Below, one piece after another: positions 164 through 30,661 of a stretch of 64,000 bases of DNA. The notes under the pieces were generated by a model. That model did not search any database and was not told the origin of the DNA. It saw only the letters and a program-made list of their open reading frames with translations. This DNA comes from Pecten maximus (lineage: Eukaryota). Made by a program: the position numbers and the translations under genes. Location: assembly GCF_902652985.1 (NCBI RefSeq), contig NC_047020.1:14322001-14386000 (forward strand), given 5' to 3'. How positions within the stretch are numbered: the stretch's first letter is position 1; each line of letters begins with the position of its first letter.

Positions 164-1628
164 GCACACTGGGGTATTATCGACCACTGGGTATTATCGA
201 CCATTTGTCTTATTAAAGCTTGATAAAAGTCGTAAGAAGCGTTGTCTTCTCATTCAATCGCTTCTATCACTCAGAATACTCCCTTCGGAATAACTAGAGG
301 TTTTCCTTAGATTTCTGAGAGCCTTTAAATTCCTAATGGATGACATTGTTGAAAGTGGCTAGCGCGGGTCTTTCTAAATAACGTAACGTTACGGGATACT
401 TTAACTGGAAAAGGGAAATGAAAGTGTTTTTTTTTTTTTTTTTTCAATATGCACAAGCAGATAGTCTGACAGCTTTTATTGTATGAACTGTATATGAATG
501 ATTATTTTTAAGGTTTTTATGAAAAATGGGATAGTCATGTCAGCTACAAGAAAAAATGGGATGGTCGATCATACCCTGACGAAATTATAATCGCAGGGTA
601 TTATCGACCGCTGGCTACATCGAAAAATAAAGGGGAGTTCCGCACGTATGATTTAATATTATAAAGGTTATATATTGACTCATTAGTAAACTATTTGTAC
701 GGTAGTGTAATGGTTAAAAAAGATAAGATAAAGTGATAGTTCTGCGAATTTGTTTTACAATTGAATAGATGTTCGAATACACTCACCGGCACGTATTTCA
801 TTTTTTTCTGTTGTAATTGATCAATCAGAATTAAGATATGCAGTGGAATATAACTAAAATAGCCAATATATTCAAAATTAAAATGGTAATTTGATGGATT
901 TAAACTTACAATAAAAGGATGTATTTATTAGATTATATATTTTTTTTTTGCGTTTATATCTACCAGAACAGTCCCTAATGAATCAGCTTTAATCCCACTG
1001 TAACATATAACAACAAAACAATTGAAAATAATTAGCACCTGGTTACGTATCAGATTGATGATAAATATCAGTTCTGTAGTTTATGGTAGTAGATTCTAAG
1101 ATTCTGTGCAGCAACGATGCAACTCTCATAAACCTGAATCGCGATACAGATATTCTGGCATACAGGTTCCGGTGCGACTTCTGTTTGGAAGGCCCATATA
1201 TACATGTAGCTTGAAACAACTTACATTTTGTATTTGTTTCCATAGTTTGTTTTCGGCACCCTACACCTTATACATCGCTGTAGTTACAATTATGATTTTA
1301 AAAGAAGATTTGTATATGAACGAGGAGTGTGTTATAGCTAGTTTGGATGAAAATATTGTCGATAATAAAAAAAATCATACTATCAATTCTTTAATAAGTT
1401 TTCTTACGGTCGATAATACCCGAAAGTGGTCGTTAATACCCAGCATATATTGTTGATTAACACTGAAGGTTATCTCAAGGTCATAAAACGTCTGTGCATC
1501 AAGTTGGTCAATAAATATGGCTCTTCAATGAGGCTATCGGATCATCGATGTTTGAGCAGTATGTGACAGTGCAACTCTCGGGTGCAGTGAATTTACCCTT
1601 AAATGGCCGATAATACCCCAGTGTGCTC
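164..1628. mobile_element. Non-autonomous TIR DNA transposon with TA target duplication
   Basis: Left end gcacactggggtattatcgacca (164-186) is the inverse of tggccgataataccccagtgtgc (1604-1626). TA at 162-163 and 1629-1630. Subterminal ggtattatcgacc-like copies near 190, 565, 597, 1408, 1428. No transposase ORF. It interrupts the LINE at ETG-I-ESL. Confidence 0.8.
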
Positions 1629-1630
1629 TA

Positions 1631-2207
1631 GAGTCGTTGTCGGAAAGAAGACGCAAACAAAAAATTATCCAGCTTCATAAAATCATTGATGGCCTGACAC
1701 CCAGCTATTTGACAGAAATGCTATACCTAATCGAATCAATGATATGCATGATCATAATACAATCTCTAACTATTGCTAACCTACAGACCAGAACCACGTT
1801 TTATAATAACACTTTCTTTCCTCTTAACTATTAACTTGTGGAATAATTTGCCTTCTAAAATAAAAGTTAACCCTTCCATTTCATTCCTGAAACTTCATCT
1901 CCATTCTGGAAAATTGAAAATTCCCATGTGCTATTTTACTGAAAACGATTGGATCAAATTTATCATGCCAGAGCTTCGTTTGAAATGTAGCACTCTTCGA
2001 GATCACCTATTTCGCAAAAAATTAACTGAAAATCCTTTCTGTACTTGCGGTCAAATAGAAACCGTAAAGCACTATCTCCTAGAGTACAATACGTATAGCC
2101 TGCTACGCCATCAATATATCAATCCTATCAACAACTTGTCTTTAGACCTCCTCCTCCAAGGTGATTCGTCGCGTACCGAGGCAGAAAACGTTAATATTTT
2201 TCGGCAT
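1631..2207 (+). mobile_element. CR1/L2-type LINE, segment 2
   Basis: ESLSERRRKQKIIQLHKIIDGLTPSYL...WNNLP...LRLKCSTL..HLF...CTCGQIETVKHYLL (degenerate C-terminal Cys/His motif); frameshifts. Confidence 0.75.
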
Positions 2208-2557
2208 AGCCGTATAATTTTCTTTTGACCCCGGATATGACGCGAAAGGTGGCGTTACTGGTCCAGATGAAGTATGTGATTGGTCAATGTAGCGGTAAAT
2301 GCAAAAATGCAGAAATGCATTTAAAAACGAATGCACGCTGAATAAGTGGATGTATCTATTCAAATGACACATTAATAAAATCCTATTCCTATTTCGAGTG
2401 CAGTCTTATTATCACCAAAACTTATTAAAACTGATATAACTGAAACTGCGCATTTATTAATTAGTTCGTTAATTTATTTCACCAGCAGTTTTACATCATA
2501 ACCACCAGCATTAAAACTGTCCTTTATCCTTTTTAAAAGATATTTCTTGTTAATGCT
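2208..2557. mobile_element. 350-bp unclassified insertion inside the LINE
   Basis: LINE peptide ENVNIFRH (ends 2207) rejoins VQAFIVK (starts 2558); no TSD visible. Confidence 0.55.
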
Positions 2558-3076
2558 GTTCAAGCATTCATTGTAAAAGTAAACGCTTTGATTCTGTATG
2601 AGGCTATTTATCATATAAAAATCTATATCTTGTAATCCATATCTACAGCTGACACTACTTTACGAGGGTTTACGAGTGTGTGCTGTACTCTACTCCTCCC
2701 CCCCCCCCCCCCCCCCCCTCGACCTTCTAACCCTTCTCGTTCCAATGTTTTCTCTTCTATTCAACTACATTATTGTTAATGTGTTAAGGTTATCATTTTA
2801 CTTATTGATATTACTATTTTACTATTAGAACGACAGTATTATCTTTTCTCTGTTGATTTTAAAACCTACGGGCCTGGAGTCATGTTGACCCATGTACATA
2901 CAGGATGTATGTCTGTGGCTTACCATGACATCTTTTCTGATTATCATGCCTGTTACAAAAGAGAAGACGGTCAAATAAAAGTACGTAAGTACTTCTTTCC
3001 GAATTCTCTGTTATTCTCTGTTGATGTATTATCTTATTGTCATTTTGAACAAATAAATACTGTTTAAACCAAACCA
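2558..3076 (+). mobile_element. CR1/L2-type LINE, ORF end and 3' UTR
   Basis: VQAFIVK/SKRFDSV* followed by a UTR ending aaataaatactgtttaaaccaaacca. Confidence 0.6.
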
Positions 3077-4671
3077 GATTGGTTATAATTTGCGAGGATA
3101 AATAACGGATCAAAATTACTATAAATCTCGCAGTTTATCGATATTACAAAATGAATGTATATGTTTTGACATTGTCAAGTCTTTTTGGATTGATCGGTTT
3201 TAGTTAAGTATGGATTTTGAGACATTTCCGTATTTTTGTGGCATCGAAGACGCTCTTTACACTCGGGCGCCGGATATTGCTGAGGTGGCGGTGGTGTGGA
3301 TATTACCAGATTTGGATTTTTTTATAAATGTTTTATACATTTTGATGATTTCCTCTATGATTACCATAAAGTATTGAAGTCATTTCAGATAGTTACCAAC
3401 TTAATAGGCGATGGCTTATTATTAGAGAGAAGGATTTTATGCTGCCCGATGAATACGTTACAGGTCATTCACGGACAGGCCTCATTAAAGGCCAATTAAG
3501 GAAACGCTTCGCATATAACAGGCATTTTCTTTACATTAGCTTACATCAGAAGTGTAGTCAGATGAACTGGGTCGATAACCATGCTATCTGCTCAAGGCTA
3601 GAGTGCTAGAGTGATTTTTCTCTGAATTCAGAAAATAACTGCATGACTTCTTACCAACTCAAAGAACAACATCGAACGATTTCGAAAACTTCTCTTGTTA
3701 TTAAAAAAAAAAAAAATGCAATAGCGACAAAATTTCAAAACTATCAGGATTATTTAGCACATTTTGATCGGATTAGCCAACGCCGTTTTAGCGTTTTCTG
3801 ATACAAAAAATACTTTGCTTCTTGGGCCTACTTGTGTTTACAAACTAAAACTCTTTCTGTGCATGCGATGCGTTGATTTTCGCATAAAGTCTTTATTTTT
3901 GAAAATTTCCTTTGGAACATTTGACATTATCGGATAGAAAAAAGAGAAACAAATCAAATGTGTTTTCAACCTCATTTGTCGTGTTCATTTTCTATAGGAA
4001 TCATTAACCGAAATGTCAACCGTCAAAACACGTCAGAGTAAGCTCAGTGGTAACTGGGAAACCAGAACTGAATAACAAAGACGCTATTCCAAAGTATACA
4101 TGCTACAATCTTTACAGGTACAGTACAATTTTGACAAGTTATCAATCAATTTTTCCTATTTCCATTCACACGAGTACTACAGTGCATTGTATGTCCTAGC
4201 TAATGCGACATTCAAGGTCTTTGTTTTCAATATTCATGTTAGCAGACCATATATCTCAATACAGAGTCTTAGGATATCTTGGTTGATGAATACTACGGAA
4301 AAGTGTTATGGTCAATCATGTTATATCATCAAATGATCAACTCTATTATGGACTTTGAGTCAAATATCAAATATATTTTTTATTGACACGTATTTTTAAT
4401 GAAAATCAATTCCAAATACATGTTGTTTTATGGAAGCCTATTAAATGACAAAAAATAATGGTTGTAGTTTATAAATTCTTTAATAAGCATTCTCTCATCG
4501 TTCATTTTTTGTCTTCCGGTTCTCCAACAATAACTACAAAAGAAACTGACATTGACAAAAATTAAAAAGTAGAACAGCTTATACAAATGAGGTAGACACA
4601 CAATGAATGAAATGACAGGTCGACACTAGTTGATAATTAAAATGATGATTTGTTAGGAATAATTCAATTTT

Positions 4672-16655: not shown

Positions 16656-18092
16656 ATGGCGAAGAACATATCTGCTGGGATACAGAGTCGAATTCAGTTC
16701 TTCAGCGACCCAGGCTGGACGTGTAAGAGATGTGGCGAAGGAAATAACTTTGAGGAGCGGTTCTGCAAGAAGTGTGGTCGCAGAAATGTGGCCCACGAGA
16801 GACTTCAGAAAAGCATCAAACGGGCGAGTTTGGATCGTACAACATGGCACTGTGCCTCATGTACATTCATTAATCAAGGAATTCACCAATTCTGTGAGAT
16901 TTGTAACACGGCGCGAAGTGGCCTGACCAACAAGGGCACACCTAGACCTGCTCAGGAAGATGGTATGTTTGATGACAATGCGAAATGTAACACTATCGGA
17001 CCGGGTATGATGGACAATATAACTGACAATGAGGAGGTCAAACTAAGAGGTAAACATCGTGGTAAAGACGAAGATGACAGAAAGTCACGTTTAAGTAGAT
17101 TTTTCGCTTTTATCACTGGTTCTTCAGAGAAAATGCCGGAGGCTGAAAGTCGCCATGAGAAGGGGGAAAAGAAAAAATCAAAAGGCGGTGTAATACGAAA
17201 CAGTAAACTGTTTCAGTTCTTTGTCGGTGATAGCAGCAAGTCTTCTGATGAAGTGAAGACAGACGAAGGAACAAGACAAAGTACTTTTTACCTGGATGAC
17301 ATAACGGAGGAATTCGAAAATGAAAGCGATAAACAACACGCAGATGTATCACAAAGGACTTATATAAGTGAATGGAAACAAACAAAGTTTGAGGCAAGAC
17401 AGCCGGACAAAAGATCGAAAGAAAAGGAACTCGGAACCATTGATCTAGTAGTCAAAACGCCTTACAAACATATAGCGGAAAAGGAACAAATCGGTTTAGA
17501 TTTTGATAAAAAACGACTCGACAGAATCGATGGAAGACAGAAAGCAGGAGTTGTGAAAGACGAGAAACCTCGTAATATTTCGCCATCACCAAAGCGAAAA
17601 GAAGGGACCGGTATTGAGGGAATAAAACGGATGTTCGAAAATAAGTTAGAAGACAGGCAGCCCTCACCTAAAACAAGAACTGCTGTAAATGAAAAGGATA
17701 AAGGGAAGGCAAATGCAGGAAAAAAGGATGAAAAAATCAAGGAAAAAAATGAGAAGAAGAAAGAAAAGGCCGATAGAAAAACAGACGAAAAGTCCTTGTT
17801 CTCAATGCAAAAAGACAAAGAAGCGAGTAAACTGAATGACAATAAACCAGAAGCGGATAGAAAGAAGAAAAGATGGCCATGTAAGTCGTGTACGTACTTG
17901 AATGACGATTTGGCACAGCGATGTCGGATGTGTGATACACAACGACCGAAGATAGAAGCAAACAGGCCCTCAAAATTGATGAAAAGACGCATGCTAAAAA
18001 GTGGACGCAGTTTAAAAATAGCTGATTTACAAAAACAAGAAGAAAAGGAGGCACACAAAAAATGGGTCAACATCACATACTTTTGTAGAGAG
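16656..18092 (+). CDS. CAPN15: Calpain-15/SOL-like protease, coding exon 1 (3 RanBP2 zinc fingers + charged linker)
   Basis: Acceptor ttttccag before 16620; Kozak gccATGg; W-x-C-x2-C...N...C-x2-C fingers (WTCKRC, WHCASC, WPCKSC); GT donor after 18092. Orthologue versus paralogue not resolvable here. Confidence 0.88.
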
Positions 18093-18341
18093 GTATATAA
18101 ACTACGAATTTTATACTTAATATATAAATCAGTGTAGATCAAATATGTATATAGCCTCTTTTACTGGAAATCATGGTATTATTATCAAGTCCGATATTTA
18201 TAGCTAGACAAGAACATTTTATGGTTTAGTGAGATAGACATAAAGTCGAACAGCATTGTTAGTAATTTATTTTACAGTAATGTTATGGGTATCAGCTTAT
18301 GCAAACGTTTATAATTAATGGTTTGATATTGTATATTACAG

Positions 18342-18547
18342 AATGGAACAATGTTTGTAGATGAACAATTCCCTCCGAATGTTAACTCATTGTACTCCAG
18401 ACCACGTGTCGCCAGCGTCAATCCAACATGGCTGCGGTGCCATGACTTGCGAACAGAGGAAAGCAAAGAGGATAACGAAGACTGGGTTGTATATCGGTCA
18501 AATCCATTGGCTGATGATATAGGCCAAGGTCGCCTTGGTAACTGCTG
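18342..18547 (+). CDS. CAPN15: Calpain-15-like exon 2 (catalytic Cys)
   Basis: FVDEQFPP...DIGQGRLGNCW. Confidence 0.95.
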
Positions 18548-19797
18548 GTAAGTTTAAATTTGGAAATTTCTTTCGACCTATTGTAGCTTCCTCAGTCGCC
18601 ATCTAGGTACTTAAGTGGACCCCTTTCTGTAGAATATTATGATCACAAACAAACTGAGGTTTAAATTTTTTGTCTCTACGATGTCTTTGATTGTAAGTTT
18701 CAAAGTAGAGGGATATAATCTAATTCAACTGAAAAATTCTTTACCAAAAGCGTTCGGGCTGTAGACCTGTACCAACAGTTTAGTTTAGTCCTTAGGCATC
18801 ACTGACAAAACAGCGGCGTGATGCATTTTAAATTAAGTTTATTAAAAGGTGCTTTTATGAATTTTGTACAATCCGTTGGTTACTCTCCATTCACAAGCTA
18901 ATCAAAGTGTACTGCGACATAGGATTTGTAGAACACAATTTTAGATGTTAAAACAGCCTGTTAAACGTTACTTCCTAGTTGCCTACCTTATTGTGTACAT
19001 CAGTGTAACTAAGTGGTATGGTGTGAGTACTATCAAAGCCTGTCCATACAACTGTTATATTGACCCCACTGCATTTATCTATTGACTCTTTTCTTGATTC
19101 CATCTCACTTTTCGTGTCACGTCATGCCATTTTTTCAGTTGAATTCATGGGGCCTTTTTTTACTATTGGCTATGTACTATGTTCTATGAAGTAATTTTGT
19201 TTTCTATTTCATTTATTAATAATCACGAAGCATTTTGTCTGTTTAAGCCACAAACGTGTGTTATAAAATGAAATAACGACACTCTTATATCACCCTGTAT
19301 ACATAAAACCCCAGTGAGCGTTGATCAGTCTTTACGGCTGGATACAATACAGGGCCTTAAGGGTAGCTATGTTCTTAACAATGACTACTATTTGTAGCGA
19401 CCGGCTGTGTACAGGAGAAACATATTAAGTACCCCAGCGACAGCGATTTTATTCAGCAGTACGGTCAAGTTTAAGCGTAGTTCTAATTTCACTGATAAAT
19501 GTTATCTGCCGGAAATACAATCTTTTAAGTAAAGAACCTCCCTAGGTGACATTGCGGTCAATTTGAAATCTATAAATTGTTGAAGAATTATTATACGGAG
19601 GTGTATATACTGTATATATGACTTTATTGAACAAAACGTAAATCAATACATGCCGTAAATTAGTGTGTTTAAAATTACATAATTACATAATAATGGGTTG
19701 GGTTGGTGTACTCGGATGTATACTATATATAAGATATTGTGAAAGCCAAACCTGAGACATAGGGAAGCGCATTATACTCGATCTATATACATTTCAG

Positions 19798-19981
19798 GTT
19801 TTTGAGTGCTCTAGCTGTACTGGCAGAGAGAAAGGAACTGTTAGAGAAGATCATTCTGACGCGACAGTTCTGTAAGGAGAGGGCCTACCATGTCCGACTG
19901 TGTAAGGACGGGAGGTGGAAAATCGTACTAATAGATGACTTCTTCCCATGTGATCAGTACAACCGACTACTGTACTCCAAG
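19798..19981 (+). CDS. CAPN15: Calpain-15-like exon 3
   Basis: [10 protein letters not shown]...[20 protein letters not shown]. Confidence 0.95.
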
Positions 19982-20720
19982 GTAGGTTAAAATAAAGATA
20001 GGCTTATCCTGATTGATTGTTTGTGACATTTATATACACATAAAACATAAAACAACTTATTCTATTTCATCTATTTATAATTTTGTAAATAAATATCCAT
20101 TTTTGAAGTACATCTTCTACAAAATTACATACAAATATATCATATCATCGTGAGAATATAATTCATTTTATTCATTAATTGATTTCGTAGATAATGTATT
20201 TGATTTCATTACATTTATTGATATTGTTAATAAATACTAATTTTCAACCTGTGTATGCGATTCCATGTTGATCTAGGGAATATTCATCAAAAACTAAAAA
20301 CAAGCTACCATACAACATTTGAATTATAAATATGTGTTTACACAAATAATCTAACTGCCCACCAAGTAAATGAGCCAGTCGTTTACGAATAGTACTATGG
20401 CTTATTTACCGAGTGCAGTTTTTAGTACCTCGGGTGTTTATTTACAAAAATAGGGTCTGACTCTAGAATCGTGTTTTTGTACTTATCTAAAACATTCGCC
20501 AATTTGCAAATTTTACTGATAAGAAATAAGTGCATGGTTTTATAACTTCCCTTTTAATAGGTGATAACTACCTACTGGCAGAAGAAATGGCTGTTGTTCC
20601 TTTATTGCAAGACCATTCTCTATTTATTCTACAATAGCTGATATTCTTTTTATGACATTCACTGCAAGAACAGCATACATTAAAAGGCATCCTGACATAT
20701 AGTAAACTTTCTATACACAG

Positions 20721-20865
20721 TCCAAGCGGAAACAGCTATGGGTGCCCCTGATTGAGAAAGCCGCCGCTAAGCTGCATGGTTGTTACCAGGCACTAGAGTC
20801 CGGACGGGCTATTGAAGCGTTAGCTCTACTAACAGGCGAACCATGTGAACGGATACAACTCCAAG
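20721..20865 (+). CDS. CAPN15: Calpain-15-like exon 4
   Basis: [43 protein letters not shown]. Confidence 0.95.
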
Positions 20866-21481
20866 GTAATTTATATCACGTAAAGTATAACTAAATCTCT
20901 AATAGATAATTTGAAGTTATTTTTCGTTTAGTATCGGTATAGTATAAACTCTTATAACAGAAGTGATTTTTTGATGTTATTAATATATCTGTTGTCACGG
21001 TCCTCATTCTCATTTTGAGATTATGACTTACCTGGATTCAAACCCAGAATTGCAAGGTTGATATCGTCAATGAAACAGAGATGTTTATCTTTCCGGGACG
21101 GCATTACCCAGTCTCCTCATAATTTTTCAGTGGTCTTCATACAAATCTATATTTTATTTTGTCTTCGTTATATTGACTAAATAATAAGAATTGAGGTTCC
21201 GTTTTAATGTAGGTTCTCATTATTTTCCAAAATCTTTTCGAGGTTTGGTTTGGTTTATTTTGTTTACAGTCCTATTTACAGCCAGGATCTTTTAAGGACC
21301 TGCCAGGTTTAGGATCATTCGAGGTTAATGTCTTAATAAAGGTATCCGATATGCAATCATTTGCTATACAATATCAAACTGGACCTCTGTTCTCGACTCC
21401 AAAGCAAAGTCCTAAAAATCGTATTAACTATTGATATAAAAGATGTCAACATATGTTAAAGTTGTTTCTTTTCTTAAACAG

Positions 21482-21554
21482 AACAGGAAGATGACGATGT
21501 GGAGATAGACGAGAAGAAAATTTGGACAAAGCTCGTCAAGGCTCGCCAGTCTAA
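21482..21554 (+). CDS. CAPN15: Calpain-15-like exon 5
   Basis: EQEDDDVEIDEKKIWTKLVKARQSK; phase-consistent AG/GT boundaries. Confidence 0.85.
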
Positions 21555-22659
21555 GTAAATATATTAATATCTATATCTATAATAATTACCTTGTGTGTGT
21601 TCATTACGACCTGCAAGAGACTCGAAATATAGAGTGAAATATATTTAAAGACTGCATTTTCTTGCCACATAATTTATTACTAAAACAATAATAAAAAGGA
21701 ATGTTGCGATAAAAATAAAACTAAAGCATAATATATACTTGTATATATAATATGATCATGTCAAGCTATCGGGTCGACCATTACTGCGCCATTGAAACGT
21801 TTTATGTCATCTATGTCAAGAATCCGAGCCCAAGAGACAGATGCTATATTTACTGTTAGAAACACACAGGAATAATTATGGAGACCAGTATGTGTTGTAA
21901 ATGTCATTTATTAATGACTTATCAAATTTCAGCTTGAATATCAATTACTTAACAATGTTAATGGTATACCCCAAAAAATATCTGATGCGAGAAATCAACA
22001 TTTGTAATCTAACAGCAAAGATGGGGTAACAATTTGGCATTGATGACCTAGTTTAAAATTTGAACCTTCCGAAATAAGGACATGGATGTGGCACAGTGGT
22101 ATAAGCTACGGCTACTTCTGGCTAGGCGATTGGGTGACGTAGATAGTGAGTTTGAGGCCCGAACAGAGCACATATAATAAAATTATTTTCCTTTGTCATT
22201 TGTGTTACTATGTAATACAAACTGTATATTTGATTATTAGTTCAATGTATCATATTCACTATGCGTCGTAGTTGTACTCTGAGTGAATGAATAAAACTTA
22301 ATCTGATAATATTACTAGTGTCACACACATATAAAAACGTAAACAACATCGATCATTTAGATATCGCTTTCACGCCGAAAAACCCTTTGAATTGAGCTAT
22401 AATAATGTAAATTACTATTTTTCTTAATTCTAATGAAATGTTAACAATACCAAAAAAGGAATAGCACACATACTCACTGTCTTGCACACATGCTTCGGAA
22501 AATCACGTAAAATATTACGGAAAGGCCAGAGTGGTTTTAAAAGCTCAGTGTACAAAATTCATGAAGCTATTAAAACATACATCTCGAGATGTCAATGACA
22601 AAAGATATTTCATTATAAAATAAGGAAAGGTTTTCGTTGTAGCAATACAAAAAATTGAT

Positions 22660-23330
22660 CATGCAACTAGCAAGACATAACAAGATTAACACAATCATAT
22701 AATCATAGCACTAACAAAACTAATCAGGCTTAAAAACCTTGACACTGCCAAAACTGACCCTTCGTAAAATCAAAACAATGACAAAACTTATCAGCGTAAA
22801 ACCATAGCACTGACAAAACTAGTTTGGCGTAAAATCATAACACTGACAAAACAAATCAGGCGTAAAATCATAACACTGACAAAAATATTCCGTCGTAAAA
22901 TTGTAACACTGACAAAACTAGTTAGGCGTAAAATCATAACAATGACAAACCTAGTTAGGCGTAAAATCATAACACTGACAAACCTAGTTAGGCGTAAAAT
23001 CATAACAATGACAAACCTAGTTAGGCGTAAAATCATAACAATGACAATACTTGTCAGGCGTAAAATCATAACATAAAACAAAGTTGTCATGCGTAAAGTC
23101 ATAATACCGAAAAAACTAATCAGGCGAAAAATCATAACACTGACACAACTAGTCATGCGAAAAATCATAACACTGTTAAATCTAATCAGGCCTAGAATCA
23201 TGGCACTGATAAAACTAATCAGGCGTAAAGTCGTAACACTAACAAACTAATCAGGGGTAAACTCAGGACACTTACAAAACTAGCCAGGCGTGAAATTATA
23301 ACACTTACAAAACTAATCTGGTGGAAATTA
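22660..23330. repeat. 33-bp minisatellite, about 20 diverged copies
   Basis: Unit ggcgtaaaatcataacactgacaaaactagtta. Confidence 0.9.
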
Positions 23331-23819
23331 TATTGAAATTGGATTAGAGGACCAAATTACTAGTTCTTTACTTTTATTTTGCTTTGATAGAAGAAGTAAA
23401 TGGTGAAAGTTTACTGGATACGTATTTCGGGGATAATTGAATTGAAAATCTCAACTTTCAACGTTTTTCAGATAGCAATTCGATTTATACAAAGACTTTT
23501 TTTCCTGTGACAAGTTCTAAAGTCCAAACTTTGCCCGGGTTCGTTTAACTTTATAGCAATAACAGGAATGTCAATTGGTTGCACTGACCACAAACTTCCT
23601 ACTCTCAATCAGCTCTCAATCAGTTGTTTTTTAGGGATTTTCTGATACATTGAAATCATAGCTAACTTAAAAAAATGTTTTAAACGTATCTATGAGCACA
23701 GACACATAATTGAGCATATGTAGCACTACATAATAGTTATGTACATGAGATTCATTGGCCAGTTACAGCTAAATCAAACAATTGTATCCGACAAACTGCT
23801 TATTCACTATCCATTCTCA

Positions 23820-26630
23820 TTATCGTTTCAGCATTTCTAAGACGGAATAATTGTGTTTCTTTTGCTTTGAAAAGTCAATGATAAGATCATGTTCCTTAGT
23901 TGGTATATCATTAACCTTCCGAGCACGAGACCGCCAAGACCCCGCTATGTCGTGTTGCACTGGAAGTACATGATCGTCATCAGGAGACGCCGGAGAGGGA
24001 GCGTCATCCTTAACAGCTTCTGTAGATCCTGATTCGAAAGTTTCCATAACTTCCTGTCTTCCAGAACTTTGTTTGTTTTTTGTCTTTACTTCTATGTCTG
24101 CAAAAGGCCAAGTCTGGACATATCTCTCAATAAGACTGCCGAGACATCCCTGGAAATGTATGTTATTAGTATCGACGGTGGGATCTGCTGCACTTTTGAA
24201 CAATACATTCCTAAACACCCAAGGTAAGAATCCGCCAGCCAGGGTGGCTAGAGTCTGATTGCTGTTGTTGACTTCGTACATATCCCCAAAAGCGATGACC
24301 ACCAACAGGACAAAGAGCAGGAAACCAATTATAACGAGAAAACCGGATATCGCACTAAACAGATTATTAAGCAACGGACCAGGACTTCCACAACAAGGCA
24401 TTTCTGAGGTTTCAAAGAAAAACTTCTGCGTGATATATGGTGTGTCTTTTTTGTCCAAGAACAAGATAAGTCGTTTTATTTTCCATTTCAAACGGTCATT
24501 CTTCACTACAAGTACTGGGCGGTTGGTGTACGTAGATTTAGAATCAGAAATGGGCTGTGAAATTGAACCGTGGACCTTAGCTGTCTCTGATTTTAACTGG
24601 AATGCTGTATTCTCTTGCTGATCTTCTGATTGCCATGACACCTTTTTGACCTCATCTTCAGATTTTGCCAAAACAGTAGAAAGCATGTTTTTGTTAAATA
24701 CTAGATACTTTTTAGATACACTTCCAAAACAGTCTTTCCCGTAAAGGAAAAGCATGAACACGAGGGATACGTACTGCATTGTATGTGTAGAGTTTAAGAT
24801 GATACCGATGACGGTATAGACAACAACTTCTACAAAGAATGTGATGCATTCTGTAACAAGAAATATGGTAGAGTACATTGTGATTAGGCACACCAAGATG
24901 ATGCTGATTTGGATACTTCTCCTTCTCAAGGACTGATGACCTGGGATATCAAATACAGTTTTAGATGTCAGGAATTCAATCTCAAAAAAGTCAATGAAAT
25001 GCGTGGCAACTGTGGACCGTAGTTGTTCATCTTGTGACCTCTTTGGGGGAAGGAAATTTATGACAAGGTGAATAATGAATCGAACTGTTAGATTGATCGT
25101 AGGGAAGAGGGACACCAGTAAAGTACATATGACAAACGGCACCGTTATCATCCAGTAAACTGGAGCTAGAATCAAAGCAAAAATTCCACATTTTTCGCAA
25201 GGTTTCATCAAAACCATTGCGCTCCACCCTACAGCTCGCATCGGCGAACGGTCGCGCATATCTCTGAAGCATTTCTTCAAAACAAAAACGAAATTGTCGG
25301 TAACTGTGTCTTTCAGGATACCTATCAGAAATATATCCACGACGATGAGTCCGTAACACACAAGGAAGACGACATGAAGAGGGTTTAACATCAATGTAAA
25401 ACTTCCACGGAATCCTAAAGTTAACCCGCGACTGATTGCAGCCTTCTGGTATAACGTATGATTTTTCTGTTCAAACAACATATAGACGACAACACGAATG
25501 ATCCAGGGACATACAATCATCACCATTATGACAAGGTCCATACATATTTGAAGACATTTGTACCAAGTCAGGTTGCACTTGTGCGTCAAAAAAGAACCAA
25601 ATATCTTGCTTCTACAACACTTGGTAAGAGATGTCCTTCTACTGATTTTGCATCGTAGTATAGTGTCGTAAAGTGTTTTGGCTATACCCACAGGCACGTA
25701 ATTCTCAGGAATAAGTCGACCACGCTGTACAAGAAAATGTATTGTTCTGATGGGAAGTTCGTATGTTTTGTCTTCCTCAATGTAGTCAACTAATTCTCTA
25801 AGGTTTGGCGATTCCCTCAGTGCAGAACTGGAAAGGACATTTGTCGCATTACTTGGCGGATGTTGTGTCTTCATTATCTGTAAATTGAACTCCGAGGCAA
25901 GTGTATGCTGATAAGGAATGAACCCCCGCGAAGCTCGGTATAAATGGGATGGAATAACAAGAGGCAGATACATGATTACAAAGAAGTTCAACACAACAAT
26001 ACAAGTAAGAAGAATGGTTGTCCAGAAGTCTCGAGTCATCTCAGAACACGAGACAGTACCTTTCTCGTCCTTTTGACAACAAACATAGTAGATCCTAGCT
26101 CCGCTTGGGGTGTCACGCAAACGTTTATTACACAGCTCCTCTTTTGTATTCCATGTAGAGTCGATATGTCTAGCCATTTTGAAATCGTTGAATACAAATG
26201 ACTCGGCGAGTTTCGAGAACATCGTTTGGTTGGCAACGCATCCGGGAATAGACTCTGCGATTTCGACTTTCAGATTCGACACGCCGTATGCAAGCGTTGT
26301 GAGAGATAGCATCGCGAATTCCTCCCTGAGCCACAACAGACCTCGTCCCTGTTTGCTTCGTATACGCATCCATAAGGATGGATCAAATATGTCACCGTCG
26401 CTCGCATTCCAAGTAGCAGTTATATTTGACGAGGACAGATGTATAGCAATTAGATTCGTCCCTTGATCCAAAATCACACGGAGTGCTTTAAGTATTTCCT
26501 GATCATTTGTAGAAAGCATACACTGCGATGAAGAATTTGCTGAAGACGTTTTAGTCGTTGAACTACCAATTCCATGGTCGTGTCCCACAGATAAATGGAT
26601 GACGAAAAATGATACAAGTATGACTAACAT
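23820..26630 (-). CDS. Uncharacterised multi-pass membrane protein (~936 aa), uninterrupted ORF nested antisense in calpain intron 5
   Basis: 2.8-kb stop-free ORF in AT-rich DNA. First ATG at 26630 gives signal-like MLVILVSFFVIHLSVG; a Cys-rich ectodomain follows, then roughly 8-10 hydrophobic segments. The ORF-track start at 26720 is a GTG. Confidence 0.85.
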   Translation of the reverse strand: MLVILVSFFVIHLSVGHDHGIGSSTTKTSSANSSSQCMLSTNDQEILKALRVILDQGTNLIAIHLSSSNITATWNASDGDIFDPSLWMRIRSKQGRGLLWLREEFAMLSLTTLAYGVSNLKVEIAESIPGCVANQTMFSKLAESFVFNDFKMARHIDSTWNTKEELCNKRLRDTPSGARIYYVCCQKDEKGTVSCSEMTRDFWTTILLTCIVVLNFFVIMYLPLVIPSHLYRASRGFIPYQHTLASEFNLQIMKTQHPPSNATNVLSSSALRESPNLRELVDYIEEDKTYELPIRTIHFLVQRGRLIPENYVPVGIAKTLYDTILRCKISRRTSLTKCCRSKIFGSFLTHKCNLTWYKCLQICMDLVIMVMIVCPWIIRVVVYMLFEQKNHTLYQKAAISRGLTLGFRGSFTLMLNPLHVVFLVCYGLIVVDIFLIGILKDTVTDNFVFVLKKCFRDMRDRSPMRAVGWSAMVLMKPCEKCGIFALILAPVYWMITVPFVICTLLVSLFPTINLTVRFIIHLVINFLPPKRSQDEQLRSTVATHFIDFFEIEFLTSKTVFDIPGHQSLRRRSIQISIILVCLITMYSTIFLVTECITFFVEVVVYTVIGIILNSTHTMQYVSLVFMLFLYGKDCFGSVSKKYLVFNKNMLSTVLAKSEDEVKKVSWQSEDQQENTAFQLKSETAKVHGSISQPISDSKSTYTNRPVLVVKNDRLKWKIKRLILFLDKKDTPYITQKFFFETSEMPCCGSPGPLLNNLFSAISGFLVIIGFLLFVLLVVIAFGDMYEVNNSNQTLATLAGGFLPWVFRNVLFKSAADPTVDTNNIHFQGCLGSLIERYVQTWPFADIEVKTKNKQSSGRQEVMETFESGSTEAVKDDAPSPASPDDDHVLPVQHDIAGSWRSRARKVNDIPTKEHDLIIDFSKQKKHNYSVLEMLKR

Positions 26631-29461
26631 ACTGATGTATTTATCTTCGACTGTAGCTATGTCTGTCACGTTATATAACACAGCAAGCACTTGGCAGTTT
26701 AGAATGACAGAGCTGAACACGGTCAGTGGGTTGAACTCAAATGGTGTTCAAATAATAATTCGATCCTTACATAATACGATTTAAATAAATACAAAGGCGC
26801 TTTGATCTTCTGTAACCAAATACAACATAACGTCTTCAAGGCTGCGTGACGGTAGCACATTGTAGGGTACCCGGGTTTCTCACATGCAATGGTACATTTA
26901 ACGGCATAGCGCGCATTACTGTTTTGTTTGTTCATATATTGATATGCACATGTATAATTCCAACATATACAGTTCTCCTCGTACAAATATTTCTTGAAGG
27001 GAATAATAAACTCTTTAAACTTAATCAAAACATATATAGTAACTATACATGCTAATAAGAATATACACATATTTAGCTCTATTTGTAAATAAAAAAATAT
27101 CTTCTAGTTATAGTCCCGATGTCTGAAACAATGTATGACAAATGAACAGGATTGCATCAAGCTTAGATATATTTATCATTACTCATTTTGGCATATATGT
27201 TTAAAGTTGTTTAATATAATTACACATCAAATATTGATATAGCGTTTTACATAGTAATGATATCCTAATGTGCATGCTTAAATTGCAAAGTTATCGCTAT
27301 TAAACATACCAGACTAAATTTGGTAATACAATGTACCTTATTAAGGTGACGAGCGTAACCCATCGATATATTCTTTTAAGGTTTCATACTTCACTAAAAA
27401 CAAACAAAGACTATAACAGGATTGGAGATAACGAAGGACTTCGCCAGACATGATTGACAATCAGCTGTGACGAGCTGCCCCTGAGAGTTTCATAAACCTT
27501 TCAACTTATCTCCAAATTACAACAATATGTATTTATTTTATATGCACATGTATAACTAGAATATATATATGGAATAAATCTAATGCAGCAGGATCATTTC
27601 TAGTTTTTGATGGTACTATTTCTTATGTATTTAAAAAAAATGTTTTAAATATAATTGATTCTTTTTATTTCCTGTTAAGCTAATCAAACAGTCTATTTAA
27701 GACTGGAGCAGAACACCTCGAAATGTCGTAACCTGCCTTACGCATTGTACAAACACATTGGGTATTCGGCAGCGGAAGTCCTTTGTTCCATTATATTGAT
27801 AAAAAGATAAGTAAACAGACCTTCTGTGTTATGAAAACATGAATACCTGATTACATAGCTGACTCATTTTAAGAATATTTATTGCAAAGATCTTCATTTC
27901 AAATTTTCGCATTCGATTGATTAAAACTATATACATATGTAGTAAGACTACTGAAATGTGGCGATTGGATGAAACATGTAATGTATTTACATATTTAGTT
28001 ATGTGACCTGAAATGACATTGATAGTTACTAATGGCTGTCATGGTGTTACATACATCTTACGTTTAGGGGTTAATAATGTGACCGACATACCCTTTTTAA
28101 CTACTTTCTTTGAAAAATACACTGATGAATATAATTACGAAGTAGAGTAATTGTTTTTAAATTAAGCATACGATTGTATGTTACATAGCATTTTGATAGA
28201 TAAATCATAGCCGTGTCCACAAATACTTTATATTTAAATGTGCTAAACTTATATTCAACCTTATTGCTTACCCGCTAGGCCTACTCATTCTTGTCATATT
28301 ATATTTAGTCATTTTTTGTCGACATCCCGCAGTTTGTCACTGCGCCAAACATGTGAACCGACAATGCAAGCTTACAGTCAAATGTTTATCAGAATAACTG
28401 GTGCCTTGAATGAAGATTTTTACAGAGACACGAGACCTATGATCCAAAACGTTTAGCGTAAATATTAAACTGAGGCCTAATCGTCGGCGCGCATGCAAAA
28501 CTCGTGTTATTACAATGAATTAAATCTTTGCCGATACCACAGATCAGTCTGCACTTCAAAATCAGAATAAAATTGCATGATATAGAGCTCTGAAGTTATG
28601 GAAATATGTACACAAAAATGTTCGGTGGCGGGTTCCCTCTTCACCACGATTTCACCTAGATTCAGGCAGAAATACTGGTACTCTGGTAAACTGCCGAAAC
28701 GTTCCGGGAAACAGCTCGTCATCTAATGTAACGAGTCTATCCGAGCTACATCTTGAGTTTCTGGGCTTCTCTGATTGGTCTTTCGTCATATATATATTCA
28801 GAGTTTGATCGAAAAACAAGCTTTATATAGAACTTGAAATTGTGGATCCAATAAGTTGGTTTTGGGATACACGCTAATTTCATTTTTCCCGAGAAAGAAA
28901 AACGACTAAGCTATACAATTTTATTCATTAACATGTATTGTGTCTTAACCAAATTAAAAGTGAAGACCCAATAAAATTTCCCAAGATCCAAGAACTCGAG
29001 GATAACATTGACCATGGACCAAAAGTTATGCCTTTATAAAACTATGTAATTAATTAGAAAACATCTTATATGGTGTACAGATAGTATAAATAGATAGTCA
29101 AATAAAAAGTTAAAAAAAAAAAACAAAACAAAACAAAAAATACAAAAAAACCCACAAAAAACCCCACAAAAAAACCCAAAGTTGAAGCGAAGTGATGACA
29201 GTGCATGTGATGTAGCAAATGTTTTGTTTATCTCAGCAGTTAATTGCGCCCCACAGAACTCGGCCAAAACTGCGGGCAGCGGGTGGTAGCAATGACAATG
29301 TCATGTTGCAATCAGTATGATTTAAATATCTTATTCCTGACTAAAGATAGTATGTTTTAATGAATAGAGAAAAATAAAGTAAACAATTGAAATAATTAAT
29401 TCAATGTATTAAACGTTATTATTTCATGCCAATACCTAAATATGAAAATATTGATATGAAG

Positions 29462-29590
29462 GTTTTTAATGGGGACATCTTGTGGGACACGGAATATGAA
29501 ACCTAGCGAACTACAACACTACGACACTATGGGACTGATACCTAACCACGCCTACTCACTGTTAGACATTCAGGATGTAGCAGGAAATCG
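29462..29590 (+). CDS. CAPN15: Calpain-15-like exon 6 (catalytic His)
   Basis: FLMGTSCG...MGLIPNHAYSLLDI. Confidence 0.95.
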
Positions 29591-30087
29591 GTGAGCTATC
29601 ATGCAATCTAAGAAAAATTATCTCCCTTTGATTGTATCGGAGTGTATTGCTTTTTATTGATACTTAGTTATTTATCTTGCAAAATTATATTATTATAAAC
29701 TTATTAGAAAGAGTAATCAGTCATCTATCTTGGGGATATTTTCCAGGCCTTATCACTACTAAAATTATATTTTAATAGTGTATTTAGTAAAGGTTGTAAA
29801 TATATTTTTCACCAATATTTGATTTTTCACATATACAAATAGAGATTCTCCAACACGTTGAAATTGCTCATCATGTTTATTTAACTTGAGGCAGTTGATT
29901 TTCAGAACAGACACGAGCTTAATCTTTCGTCCATGAATTGTCACTATTAAAAATAGTCCTTAGTATCAAGCTATTAAACATTAAATATCATCTAGTTAAT
30001 ATTCTTCAATTTGCCGCTTTTAGAATTTATTATCAAATACAAACACGGTTGCATTATCTACATACCAAACTTAATCTATCTATCTAG

Positions 30088-30249
30088 GTTGGTAAAAATT
30101 CGGAATCCTTGGGGTACAGTTTCTTGGAAAGGCAGCTGGTCTGACAACTCCTCTAAATGGTCACAAGTCAGTGAGTGGTCAAAGAAAGACATACAACTGG
30201 AGGGAAATGACAAGGGGATATTCTGGATGTGCCTTCCAGACTTTATGCG
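30088..30249 (+). CDS. CAPN15: Calpain-15-like exon 7 (catalytic Asn)
   Basis: LVKIRNPWGTVSWKGSWSD...GIFWM. Confidence 0.95.
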
Positions 30250-30661
30250 GTATATATTGATATACTATATGTGTACTAGATATAATTGTTGGTGAAAATT
30301 GGGTTTTTTTTCCGACTTTCACGTTATCAAGCTGCTCTCATTTTATTTTCTAGTAGTTTTTGTGTAAAAGGAGAGGGTCACTGTGACCTTGCACATAGTG
30401 ATAAACATGGTATCCGTCACTGAGCTGACGGAACAAGCTTGTTTTGCTTCTTACTTTTATTATGTTAAAAATGATAATATAAAATATAGAAAATGCTGCA
30501 AATGTGTAGGAGAAGGATCACTAAGTTTTACGTTCGCTGCATTTGTATTTGAAAACTTTGGATATTTTATGGCGATTAATAAAATGTATCGTTCTTATTT
30601 TATATACTAGTAATACTATAACATTTCCTATTTTATAGGATAATCCGCTTGCTTGTTACAG

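What the first reader, a model, noticed from the sequence alone, without database searches (positions are those of the whole stretch)
23820..26630. Uninterrupted ~936-aa orphan multi-pass membrane protein ORF nested antisense in the calpain catalytic-domain intron
Seen: an uninterrupted ORF between the exons carrying the catalytic Cys and His. It encodes a signal-like N-terminus, a Cys-rich ectodomain (LCNKR...YVCCQ...VSC), a first TM, a loop with Cys clusters, several more TM segments, a soluble domain and a final TM pair (FLVIIGFLLFVLLVVIAFG / LATLAGGFLPWVF). I recognise no domain. Inference: an undescribed receptor, channel or transporter family. The intronless coding region suggests retroposition or transfer into the intron, and a functional link to the host protease (regulation or substrate) is possible but unproven.
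Basis: partly seen in the sequence, partly recalled or inferred. Interest (0 to 1): 0.75.

Follow-up and report, generated by a model that had tools for sequence, protein, structure and literature searches.

The report
Uncharacterised nine-pass membrane protein gene
An intact gene for a large membrane protein of unknown function sits backwards inside an intron of a scallop calpain gene; it belongs to a sizeable mollusc-and-annelid protein family that nobody has characterised and whose predicted shape matches no solved structure.

Summary
The ORF is real. Window 23823-26630 (-) encodes 936 aa from the first ATG, inside a 975-codon stop-free stretch (chance about 3e-30). It lies antisense in the ~8.6-kb intron between calpain exon 20706-20864 and the His-bearing exon (~29460-29591).

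It is not an orphan. phmmer finds 472 cluster representatives, 233 of them at E<=1e-30. Named members come from bivalves, gastropods, a chiton, octopuses and an annelid, and all are labelled "uncharacterized". Its scallop orthologues carry a precomputed Pfam label, PF28478, which is absent from the local library. The same genome holds at least seven other copies with an uninterrupted reading frame.

No Pfam, NCBIfam or PDB sequence or profile match was found. Confident AlphaFold models (pLDDT 83 and 86) match nothing in PDB or BFVD. The inferred topology is signal peptide, disulfide-rich glycosylated ectodomain, nine TM helices, N-terminus out and C-terminus in. TM6 carries a conserved acidic stripe (E594/E601).

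The nesting looks incidental. A sister copy (85% identical, pairwise dN/dS 0.23) lies on another contig away from any detected calpain exon. A single-ORF coding region is a family trait, no poly(A) tail is present, and the window copy evolves about three times faster.

Function is unknown. My best guess, at about 0.3, is a cation channel or transporter. Interest is moderate.

The parts
23823..26630 (-). Coding sequence of the nested gene: 936 codons, ATG at 26628-26630, TAA stop at 23820-23822
   Evidence: full-length orthologues at 70% and 69% identity
26583..26630 (-). Residues 1-16, MLVILVSFFVIHLSVG: probable signal peptide. The cleavage site is my inference; no predictor was run
   Evidence: hydropathy; AF2 helix 2-15 followed by a low-pLDDT linker; most family members start with a hydrophobic N-terminus
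26016..26582 (-). Residues 17-205: extracellular alpha/beta ectodomain. Six Cys (37, 131, 167, 184, 185, 195) are invariant in 35 members and invariant or >=90% conserved in 61. Carries N-glycosylation sequons
25953..26015 (-). TM1, residues 206-226
25545..25952 (-). Residues 227-362: cytoplasmic domain with long beta-hairpins and the conserved RCxIR...CC cysteine cluster (C327, C338, C339). Net K+R excess of +9.7
25053..25544 (-). Residues 363-526: TM2 to TM5, with conserved R379 (57 of 61), P375, Y426, G482, P510 (61 of 61) and R517 (53 of 61)
24729..24908 (-). Residues 575-634: long TM6-TM7 helical hairpin with the motif ECxxFxVE...YT..G.ILN. It carries E594 (24849-24851), E601 (24828-24830) and N613 (24792-24794)
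   Evidence: conservation in TM6 shows helical periodicity, shuffle p 0.01
24351..24728 (-). Residues 635-760: cytoplasmic helix plus a small beta domain (W716, F724, FLDxxDxPxIP), ending in the PGP motif before TM8
24201..24350 (-). Residues 761-810: TM8-TM9 hairpin with the LATLAGGFLP motif (G800 and P803 invariant in 61 of 61)
23823..24200 (-). Residues 811-936: small conserved C-terminal cytoplasmic element (W841, D845), a disordered tail, and a conserved terminal D-L-x-I patch
22701..23315 (.). 33-bp minisatellite, 18.7 copies, in the 3' flank (probable 3' UTR) of the nested gene; also present beside the sister copy
   Evidence: contigs from the RNA library lie on 23060-23760
22680..27799 (-). 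Unit shared with the sister copy on contig C2: 85% identity over 23724-27471, 79-81% over the minisatellite, 73% over 27485-27799. No similarity beyond these limits
16656..18134 (+). Host gene: large open exon region with a RanBP2-type zinc finger (22.1 bits, below the 27-bit cut-off); the SOL/calpain-15-like N-terminus
18354..20864 (+). Host gene: three Peptidase_C2 exons (18354-18596 with the catalytic Cys in QGRLGNCW; 19799-19984; 20706-20864)
29460..30274 (+). Host gene: exon with the catalytic His (NHAYSLLD, within 29460-29591) and exon with the catalytic Asn (RNPWG, 30083-30274)

Best explanation
SHOWN. This is a real, intact protein-coding gene whose coding region is one exon. It encodes a 936-aa protein of a large mollusc-plus-annelid family that has no characterised member. 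Its scallop orthologues carry the Pfam label PF28478. The family has no detectable relative among solved or viral structures.

INFERRED FROM SEQUENCE STATISTICS AND THE MODEL. The layout is: signal peptide, a roughly 190-aa disulfide-rich N-glycosylated ectodomain, nine transmembrane helices with the N-terminus outside and the C-terminus inside, two cytoplasmic domains, and a disordered tail.

SHOWN. The copy in the window is one of two products of a young, lineage-specific duplication of a roughly 5-kb DNA unit. Both copies keep full-length open frames, and pairwise dN/dS is 0.23. The window copy accumulates amino-acid changes about three times faster than its sister.

INFERRED. Its antisense position in the calpain-15-like intron is an accident of where a duplicate landed, not a functional coupling.

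MECHANISM (inference; my probability about 0.3). The protein forms, or is the core of, a cation-conducting or cation-coupled pathway through the membrane. The TM6-TM7 hairpin presents a conserved polar stripe (E594, E601, Y605/T606, G609, N613), and conserved arginines in TM2 and TM5 (R379, R517) partner it. The ectodomain and the cytoplasmic domains act as the regulatory or ligand-binding parts.
For: REALITY AND SELECTION.
- 975 stop-free codons, chance about 3e-30.
- Full-length orthologues in Mizuhopecten (70% identity, 98% coverage) and Argopecten (69%, 99%).
- Pairwise dN/dS 0.23 with dS 0.32 against the sister copy, whose single TAG is simply a stop five codons earlier.
- Contigs from an RNA library (X3) lie only inside the ORF and its 3' flank: 6 of 6 contigs within 23060-26325. 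No contig from any of the 4 runs lies on 22400-22793 or 26931-27521.

FAMILY.
- 472 representatives at E<=1e-3, 348 at <=1e-10 and 233 at <=1e-30.
- Named members are Crassostrea, Patella, Owenia, Liolophura, Octopus and Biomphalaria, all 'uncharacterized'.
- Own genome: 14 matches, including seven uninterrupted ORFs of 840-1021 aa from their first ATG, counting the window copy.

NO KNOWN RELATIVE.
- Pfam 0, NCBIfam 0, PDB phmmer best E 0.23. The profile against PDB gives only chance TM-helix hits, E>=0.017.
- No fused domains in 8 of 8 long members.

TOPOLOGY.
- K+R minus D+E per region, averaged over 61 members: ectodomain -4.4, loop1 +9.7, loop2 -1.1, loop3 +4.6, loop5 +3.4, loop7 +1.4. The ectodomain averages 2.1 sequons and 6.0 Cys.

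POLAR STRIPE.
- Position 594 is acidic in 59 of 61 members and position 601 in 54 of 61. R379 is kept in 57 of 61, R517 in 53 of 61, N613 in 53 of 61.
- Conservation in TM6 is helically periodic, shuffle p 0.01.
- The most divergent member, P0150, has lost R379, E387, R517, E594 and E601 together.

INCIDENTAL NESTING.
- The sister copy sits at C2:32.65 Mb with no calpain hit on that contig.
- The two copies are sisters in the tree, inside the scallop clade.
- Unique substitutions are 44 against 14, p 1e-4.
Against: FUNCTION. Nothing was tested experimentally and no homologue has a known function, so the channel/transporter reading rests on a handful of conserved intramembrane charges. Those charges could equally be structural salt bridges. 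I could not inspect model coordinates, so contacts among E594, E601, R379 and R517, any pore, and the oligomeric state are all unseen. The 45-residue TM6 helix makes the TM count (nine) an inference; no topology predictor was available.

EXPRESSION. The evidence is weak. It consists of low-depth assembled contigs without strand information. Three of the four runs are only guessed to be RNA. Contigs cannot exclude host pre-mRNA or contaminating DNA. One X3 contig carries a 1-nt insertion in a T6 run inside the ORF.

WHICH COPY MOVED. Which copy sits at the ancestral location is not shown, because no outgroup genome context could be fetched. If the orthologues in other scallops are also nested in calpain-15, 'incidental' would need rethinking.

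FAMILY LABEL AND FOLD COVERAGE. The PF28478 label shows that the family is already catalogued. I never saw its name or description. TM2-TM5 (about residues 363-560) was never searched as an isolated model.
Confidence: 0.65

Rival explanations
1. A cell-surface receptor or adhesion protein. The disulfide-rich glycosylated ectodomain binds a ligand or partner. The helical bundle and the two cytoplasmic domains relay or anchor the signal, and nothing crosses the membrane.
For: The conserved ectodomain of about 190 aa has six conserved Cys (invariant in 35 members, invariant or >=90% conserved in 61) and 2.1 sequons on average. The cytoplasmic domains are large and conserved. The family expands into paralogue clades and a tandem cluster on contig C7, as receptor families often do.
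Against: No resemblance to any receptor fold or domain was found. The best-conserved parts are the membrane helices TM6-TM9 and their intramembrane charges, not the ectodomain. About ten copies per genome is modest for a chemoreceptor-type family.
Confidence: 0.2
2. A resident protein of internal membranes (ER, Golgi or endo-lysosome). The role would be lipid or glycan handling, scrambling or trafficking, with the 'ectodomain' facing the lumen.
For: A conserved acidic D-L-x-I patch lies at the very C-terminus of most members and looks like a sorting signal (the resemblance to dileucine-type signals is recalled, not tested). Juxtamembrane cytoplasmic Cys clusters (RCxIR...CC) are typical acylation or metal sites (this interpretation is also recalled). 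One sub-threshold hit of a long member, P0131, to EOS1, an N-glycosylation protein, has E 0.0014 and 19 bits against a 23-bit cut-off.
Against: No conserved His, Asp or Ser set typical of membrane enzymes appears among the >=90%-conserved columns. The EOS1 hit is below threshold and occurs in 1 of 8 members scanned. No fold match to any membrane enzyme or scramblase was found.
Confidence: 0.12
3. A retrogene, or a transposon- or virus-derived ORF, that was inserted into the calpain intron.
For: The coding region has no intron. The gene is a young duplicate whose unit has sharp limits, about 22680-27799. The intron around it is full of dispersed repeats.
Against: Seven own-genome family copies, this one included, are single uninterrupted ORFs, so there is no intron-bearing parent to be processed. 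No poly(A) run lies at the 3' limit. Similarity to the sister copy runs 750 to about 1,080 bp upstream of the ORF. No transposase, RT, integrase or viral fold was found. Orthologues are conserved across molluscs and an annelid, and the two copies nest within the scallop clade.
Confidence: 0.04
4. The nested gene and the host calpain are functionally coupled, through antisense regulation or a protease-substrate relation.
For: Only the arrangement supports this: the gene is antisense inside the catalytic-domain region of the host. Transcription through each other could interfere.
Against: The 85%-identical sister copy and six other intact paralogues lie away from all 59 calpain-exon matches in the genome. 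No similarity to the calpain locus surrounds the sister copy. The 10 largest ORFs flanking it have no Pfam domain, 10 of 10. A literature search for nested genes in calpain-15/SOLH listed 4 papers, and none deals with such nesting, judging from the listing and abstract starts only.
Confidence: 0.04
5. A decaying, non-functional duplicate whose frame happens still to be open.
For: The window copy has 44 unique substitutions against 14 for its sister. One RNA-library contig shows a 1-nt insertion in the ORF. Expression evidence is thin.
Against: The frame has stayed fully open while the pair diverged to a synonymous distance (dS) of 0.32, against a stop probability of 0.068 per codon. Pairwise dN/dS is 0.23. 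If the pairwise dN is split 44:14 and dS is taken as equal on both branches, omega for the window lineage is still about 0.35; this is my arithmetic, not a fitted model. All conserved family motifs and Cys are intact. The insertion lies in a T6 homopolymer at depth 4.
Confidence: 0.05

Closest known systems
The PF28478-labelled family of 'uncharacterized' lophotrochozoan proteins. Examples are Mizuhopecten yessoensis KP79_PYT04408, Crassostrea gigas XP_034306724.1, Octopus bimaculoides XP_014791192.1 and Owenia fusiformis CAH1799787.1
   Same: Homologous over the full length: 70% identity and 98% coverage to the Mizuhopecten protein, and 19-39% identity to the rest. The Cys pattern, TM layout and motifs (ECxxFxVE, PGP, LATLAGGFLP, WPxxD) are the same.
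   Different: Nothing essential differs; the window protein is a member of this family. It is one of two young copies specific to its lineage, the faster-evolving one, and it sits inside a calpain intron. I did not see the Pfam name or description, because the model is not in the local library.
Multi-pass cation channels and transporters with intramembrane acidic residues. This is a functional class, not a family; the comparison is drawn from general knowledge
   Same: It is a multi-helix membrane core. Conserved acidic residues lie seven positions apart on one face of a TM helix, with conserved TM arginines and a Gly/Pro-rich helical hairpin. Extramembrane domains lie on both sides.
Nested intronic genes of animals (the general phenomenon; recalled)
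   Same: A complete gene with its own flanks lies antisense inside a long intron of an unrelated host gene.
   Different: Here the nested gene can be traced to a recent duplication whose other copy is not in a calpain gene. The arrangement is therefore probably young.

Membership tests
PF28478-labelled lophotrochozoan membrane protein family | Significant full-length homology to proteins carrying the label | tested here: met
   P0001-P0004 all carry PF28478. E = 0 for P0001 and P0002 (70% and 69% identity, 98-99% coverage) and about 1e-162 for P0003 and P0004.
PF28478-labelled lophotrochozoan membrane protein family | Score above the gathering threshold of the PF28478 model itself | not testable with these tools
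   The model is not in the local Pfam copy. The local Pfam scan gives 0 families.
PF28478-labelled lophotrochozoan membrane protein family | Family-wide invariant residues and motifs: ectodomain Cys 37/131/167/184/185/195, C338, W356, P510, E594, G800, P803, D845 | tested here: met
   All are present in the window protein.
Any characterised channel, transporter, receptor or enzyme family | Sequence or profile match to a curated family or a solved chain | tested here: not met
   Pfam 0, NCBIfam 0, PDB phmmer best E 0.23, PDB profile best E 0.017 to phospholamban (a TM helix). Four paralogues and eight long members also have no family above threshold.
Any characterised channel, transporter, receptor or enzyme family | Shared fold with a solved structure | tested here: not met
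Processed retrogene | An intron-containing parent gene and an intronless copy | tested here: not met
   Seven own-genome copies, this one included, are single uninterrupted ORFs. The sister copy is equally intronless.
Processed retrogene | A poly(A) tract at the 3' limit, and similarity confined to the transcript | tested here: not met
   No A-run lies at about 22680. Similarity extends 750 to about 1,080 bp upstream of the ORF. The transcript limits themselves are unknown.
Transposable-element or viral protein | A TE or viral domain or fold, terminal repeats, high copy number | tested here: not met
   No Pfam domain. BFVD best E 0.21. 14 protein matches in the 918-Mb genome. Terminal repeats were not searched for specifically.
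Host gene: calpain (Peptidase_C2), SOL/calpain-15 type | Peptidase_C2 exons with the Cys, His and Asn triad motifs | tested here: met
   Four exons score above the cut-off. QGRLGNCW, NHAYSLLD and RNPWG were found. The His exon alone scores 16.7 bits, below the 23.8-bit cut-off.
Host gene: calpain (Peptidase_C2), SOL/calpain-15 type | N-terminal RanBP2/Npl4-type zinc fingers and a C-terminal SOL-homology domain | tested here: inconclusive
   One Zn_ribbon_RanBP match, 22.1 bits against a 27-bit cut-off. The C-terminal domain was not examined.

The most novel reading that the evidence does not exclude
The family is a previously unrecognised class of lophotrochozoan membrane channel or transporter with a fold of its own. 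It has nine TM helices, an acidic TM6 stripe as the permeation or coupling site, a new disulfide-rich sensor ectodomain and two new cytoplasmic domains. This scallop gene pair would be a fresh duplicate in which one copy, nested in calpain-15, is diverging towards a new role.
Probability: 0.25. Interest if true: 0.8.

Novelty: new member of a known kind. Interest (0 to 1): 0.42.

Why it matters
As a single locus it is ordinary: one more copy of an already catalogued family of hypothetical proteins, and nested genes are common.

The family is the interesting part. It has hundreds of members across molluscs and at least one annelid. It is conserved along more than 800 residues and modelled with high confidence. 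Yet no sequence, profile or fold relative turned up among solved or viral structures, and the papers I could search do not mention it.

A nine-pass glycoprotein with conserved intramembrane charges is a reasonable candidate for a new channel, transporter or receptor class in animals of aquaculture and neurobiological importance (oysters, scallops, octopus, Biomphalaria).

The young duplicate pair, with copies of unequal rate, is also a small natural experiment on the fate of a gene copy that lands inside another gene.

Tried and rejected
SEARCHES THAT GAVE NOTHING.
- Local Pfam, NCBIfam and PDB sequence searches.
- The family profile against PDB gave only chance TM-helix hits.
- The profile query to the search for homologous proteins re-found only the same four proteins.
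- The ESM Atlas was blank for the window protein and for the Octopus member P0049.
- Structure searches found nothing above background: Foldseek on PDB (twice), BFVD, VIA-wide (twice) and pdb_via.
- The short divergent own-genome relative L012 (718 aa from its first ATG, SLAGGALPF motif) was tried as a bridge to a named family. It has no Pfam hit and no homologue by word search.
- Long family members carry no fused domains, only two sub-threshold chance hits.
- Paper searches returned 0 papers for PF28478 and for eleven locus, protein and UniProt identifiers of family members. The search on nested genes in calpain-15/SOLH listed 4 papers, none relevant by listing and abstract start.
- Earlier findings of the scan: two notes elsewhere in the window, neither bearing on this gene. 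Searches by words and by sequence were blank.

READINGS REJECTED. TE or viral origin, retrogene, decaying pseudogene and functional coupling with calpain; see the rival explanations.

NOT DONE.
- Synteny in other bivalves (no tool reaches their genomes).
- Strand-specific expression (only assembled contigs were served).
- Branch-model dN/dS (no outgroup DNA).


Full report
OBSERVATION. The ORF listing reports 23820..26720 on the minus strand, 966 codons from a GTG. The first ATG, at 26630, gives 936 aa beginning MLVILVSFF. The stop-free stretch is 975 codons (23823-26747) and the stop is TAA. With the window's composition a stop is expected at 0.068 per codon, so 966 open codons have a probability of about 3e-30.

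THE HOST GENE. A genome-wide search with Peptidase_C2 places four exons in the window on the plus strand: 18354-18596, 19799-19984, 20706-20864 and 30083-30274 (window = C6:14322001-14386000). Motif scans find the catalytic Cys (QGRLGNCW) in the first exon, the Asn (RNPWG) in the last, and the His (NHAYSLLD) in an open segment at 29460-29591. That segment matches Peptidase_C2 positions 191-227 at E 0.0039, below the gathering score. A large upstream exon region (16656-18134) has a sub-threshold RanBP2-type zinc finger, which fits a SOL/calpain-15-like gene. The nested ORF therefore lies antisense in the roughly 8.6-kb interval 20865-29459, between the Cys and His exons. Pfam positions 171-190 are unaccounted for, so a small undetected exon there cannot be excluded.

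NOT AN ORPHAN. The indexed protein search returns full-length orthologues in Mizuhopecten yessoensis (70% identity, 98% coverage) and Argopecten irradians (69%, 99%), plus two unnamed 35% relatives. All four carry the precomputed Pfam label PF28478. That accession is not in the local Pfam copy, which is why the local scan finds nothing. I never saw its name. An exhaustive phmmer run over 1.84 billion cluster representatives finds 472 proteins at E<=1e-3, 348 at <=1e-10 and 233 at <=1e-30. Of 20 representatives looked up, 7 carry names: Crassostrea gigas, Patella caerulea, Owenia fusiformis (an annelid), Liolophura sinensis (a chiton), Octopus species and Biomphalaria species, all 'uncharacterized' or 'hypothetical'. 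The remaining 13 come from unnamed ENA or Logan records.

The window's own genome (918 Mb) gives 14 matches. These are the window copy, an 85-86% identical copy on contig C2, five further uninterrupted ORFs that give 840-1021 aa from their first ATG, two copies split into two frames within a tandem cluster on C7 (44.654-44.690 Mb), and two very distant hits. One distant hit is a 721-codon open frame on C18 (718 aa from its first ATG) that keeps an SLAGGALPF motif.

NO KNOWN RELATIVE. All of the following were negative.
- NCBIfam gives 0 families. PDB phmmer best E is 0.23, to an antibody chain.
- A 61-sequence family profite against PDB gives only phospholamban and MsbA TM-helix noise at E>=0.017.
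- An AlphaFold2 model built on that alignment is confident (mean pLDDT 83.4, pTM 0.78). It has no Foldseek match in PDB (best E 0.39) or in BFVD viral models (best E 0.21).
- Four paralogues and eight long family members have no Pfam family above threshold, so there are no informative fusions.
- The ESM Atlas gave no usable hit for two queries.
- Residues 363-560 were not searched as an isolated model, and AFDB was not available. 'No known fold' therefore holds only within these limits.

ANATOMY AND TOPOLOGY. In the 35-member alignment the invariant positions are C37, C131, C167, C184, C185, C195, C338, W356, G482, P510, Y630, G800, P803 and D845. In the 61-member alignment six columns are invariant (C131, C167, C184, P510, G800, P803), and most of the rest, together with E594, R379, N613, P750-G751 and W841, are conserved in at least 90% of members in one or both alignments.

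Averaged over 61 members, K+R minus D+E per region is -4.4 for the N-terminal domain, +9.7 for loop 227-362, -1.1 for 385-419, +4.6 for 439-482, +3.4 for 527-574 and +1.4 for 635-760. The N-terminal domain holds 2.1 sequons and 6.0 Cys on average. By the positive-inside rule (established knowledge) this gives N-terminus out, nine TM helices and C-terminus in. The domain of about 190 aa is then extracellular or luminal and disulfide-bonded. The two cytoplasmic domains are 227-362, with long beta-hairpins and an RCxIR...CC cluster, and 635-760. This topology is an inference. The single 45-residue helix 568-612 makes the count uncertain.

The membrane core carries conserved charges:
- Position 594 is E in 56 of 61 and D in 3.
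- Position 601 is E in 45 and D in 9.
- R379 is kept in 57 of 61 and R517 in 53 of 61.
- N613, at the TM6-TM7 turn, is kept in 53 of 61.
Conservation in TM6 and in TM8 is helically periodic (shuffle p 0.01 and 0.0075). The most divergent member, P0150, has lost R379, E387, R517, E594 and E601 together. P0049 pairs R517A with E601Q. Other members (P0012, P0077) change R517 alone.

ORIGIN OF THIS COPY. BLASTN of the whole window against 20 kb around the C2 copy gives 85% identity over 23724-27471 and 79-81% over the 3' minisatellite region 22680-23240, with nothing else. A more sensitive search adds 73% identity over 27485-27799. The 33-bp minisatellite spans 22701-23315 with 18.7 copies. No A-run lies at the 3' limit. 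The rest of the intron consists of dispersed repeats with dozens of copies.

The two coding sequences differ by dS 0.32 and dN 0.075, giving dN/dS 0.23. The 'TAG' reported in the C2 copy is its natural stop, five codons earlier. In a FastTree of 51 family members the two copies are sisters (support 99) inside a scallop clade with Argopecten and Mizuhopecten, so the duplication is younger than those splits. Where both outgroups agree, the window copy has 44 unique substitutions and the C2 copy 14 (binomial p 1e-4). The C2 copy is also closer to both outgroups: 74.7% and 72.5% identity against 70.1% and 69.1%.

The window copy is therefore the faster-evolving one and probably the derived one. 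This is an inference, because the ancestral location could not be checked. None of the 59 calpain-exon matches in the genome lies near any other paralogue. The 10 largest ORFs around the C2 copy have no Pfam domain.

Three conclusions follow. A single-ORF coding region is a property of the family and not a mark of retroposition. The copy arose by duplication of a roughly 5-kb DNA unit. The calpain nesting is most simply an accident of insertion.

EXPRESSION. Nine runs from five studies hold parts of the ORF, and one is on record as RNA. I laid four runs from four studies on 22400-28300.
- All six contigs of the RNA library X3 fall at 23060-23760, 24041-24623, 25298-25559 and 26175-26325, that is, within the ORF and its 3' flank, at 97-100% identity.
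- X1, X4 and X5, which are only guessed to be RNA, add pieces between 22837 and 26930.
- No run has a contig on 22400-22793 or on 26931-27521, and no joints were seen.
- X1 has a 1,503-nt contig at higher depth running from 27684 beyond the stretch.
This pattern fits a discrete unspliced transcript of about 4 kb, but it is weak evidence. Contigs carry no strand, depth is low, and host pre-mRNA or DNA carry-over cannot be excluded. A 1-nt insertion in one X3 contig lies in a T6 run and is probably an assembly slip.

WHAT IT MOST LIKELY DOES. No member has a known function, and nothing here tests function. I judge a membrane permeation or coupling device, meaning a cation channel or a cation-coupled transporter, to be the single most likely class, at about 0.3. 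The reasons are that the best-conserved parts are membrane helices, that conserved acidic residues lie seven positions apart on one face of TM6, that arginines are conserved in TM2 and TM5, and that an Asn sits at the hairpin turn. A surface receptor or adhesion protein (about 0.2) and a resident protein of internal membranes (about 0.12) remain open.

VERDICT. 'No recognisable domain' holds within the libraries I could reach. The locus is a new member of an already catalogued but uncharacterised family. The family itself, which is widespread in Lophotrochozoa, confidently modelled and without fold relatives, is the part worth following up.

Noticed in passing
window 22701-23315: A 33-bp minisatellite (18.7 copies, 79% matches) lies in the 3' flank of the nested gene. 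It mimics a 136-aa ORF on the minus strand (22791-23201). A related array lies beside the sister copy on C2.
   Followed up: partly
window 27684 to beyond 28300: A 1,503-nt contig at depth 15.9 in run X1, with smaller X5 contigs, covers the region just upstream of the nested gene. It is separated from the gene by a gap without contigs (26931-27521). It could be a 5' exon of the nested gene, part of the host pre-mRNA, or a separate transcript. Part of the region (about 28769-29400) is a dispersed repeat.
   Followed up: partly
window 21750-22270 and 28769-29400: Short dispersed repeats, 70-330 bp, fill the calpain intron. Each has dozens of 70-88% identical copies across the genome, some in tandem pairs, which looks SINE- or MITE-like.
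   Followed up: no
G000:C7:44654076-44690262 (L005, L008-L011): A tandem cluster of family members. It holds one intact 953-codon ORF and two copies whose homology is split over two frames or interrupted by stops, so these are possible pseudogenes or intron-bearing copies.
   Followed up: partly
L012 (G000:C18:26263792-26267148), ORF 1144-3306 minus strand: A short (721-codon) and very divergent relative with the same general layout and an SLAGGALPF motif. It has no Pfam hit and no homologue by word search. A second such hit lies on C3728.
   Followed up: partly
window 16656-18134 (+): A 493-aa open exon region of the host calpain with one sub-threshold RanBP2-type zinc finger and a weak double-zinc-ribbon hit. 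This is the SOL/calpain-15-like N-terminus.
   Followed up: partly
window 24441-24446: A T6 run inside the ORF where one RNA-library contig (X3, depth 4.3) carries an extra T. It is probably an assembly slip, but a frameshift allele is not excluded.
   Followed up: partly
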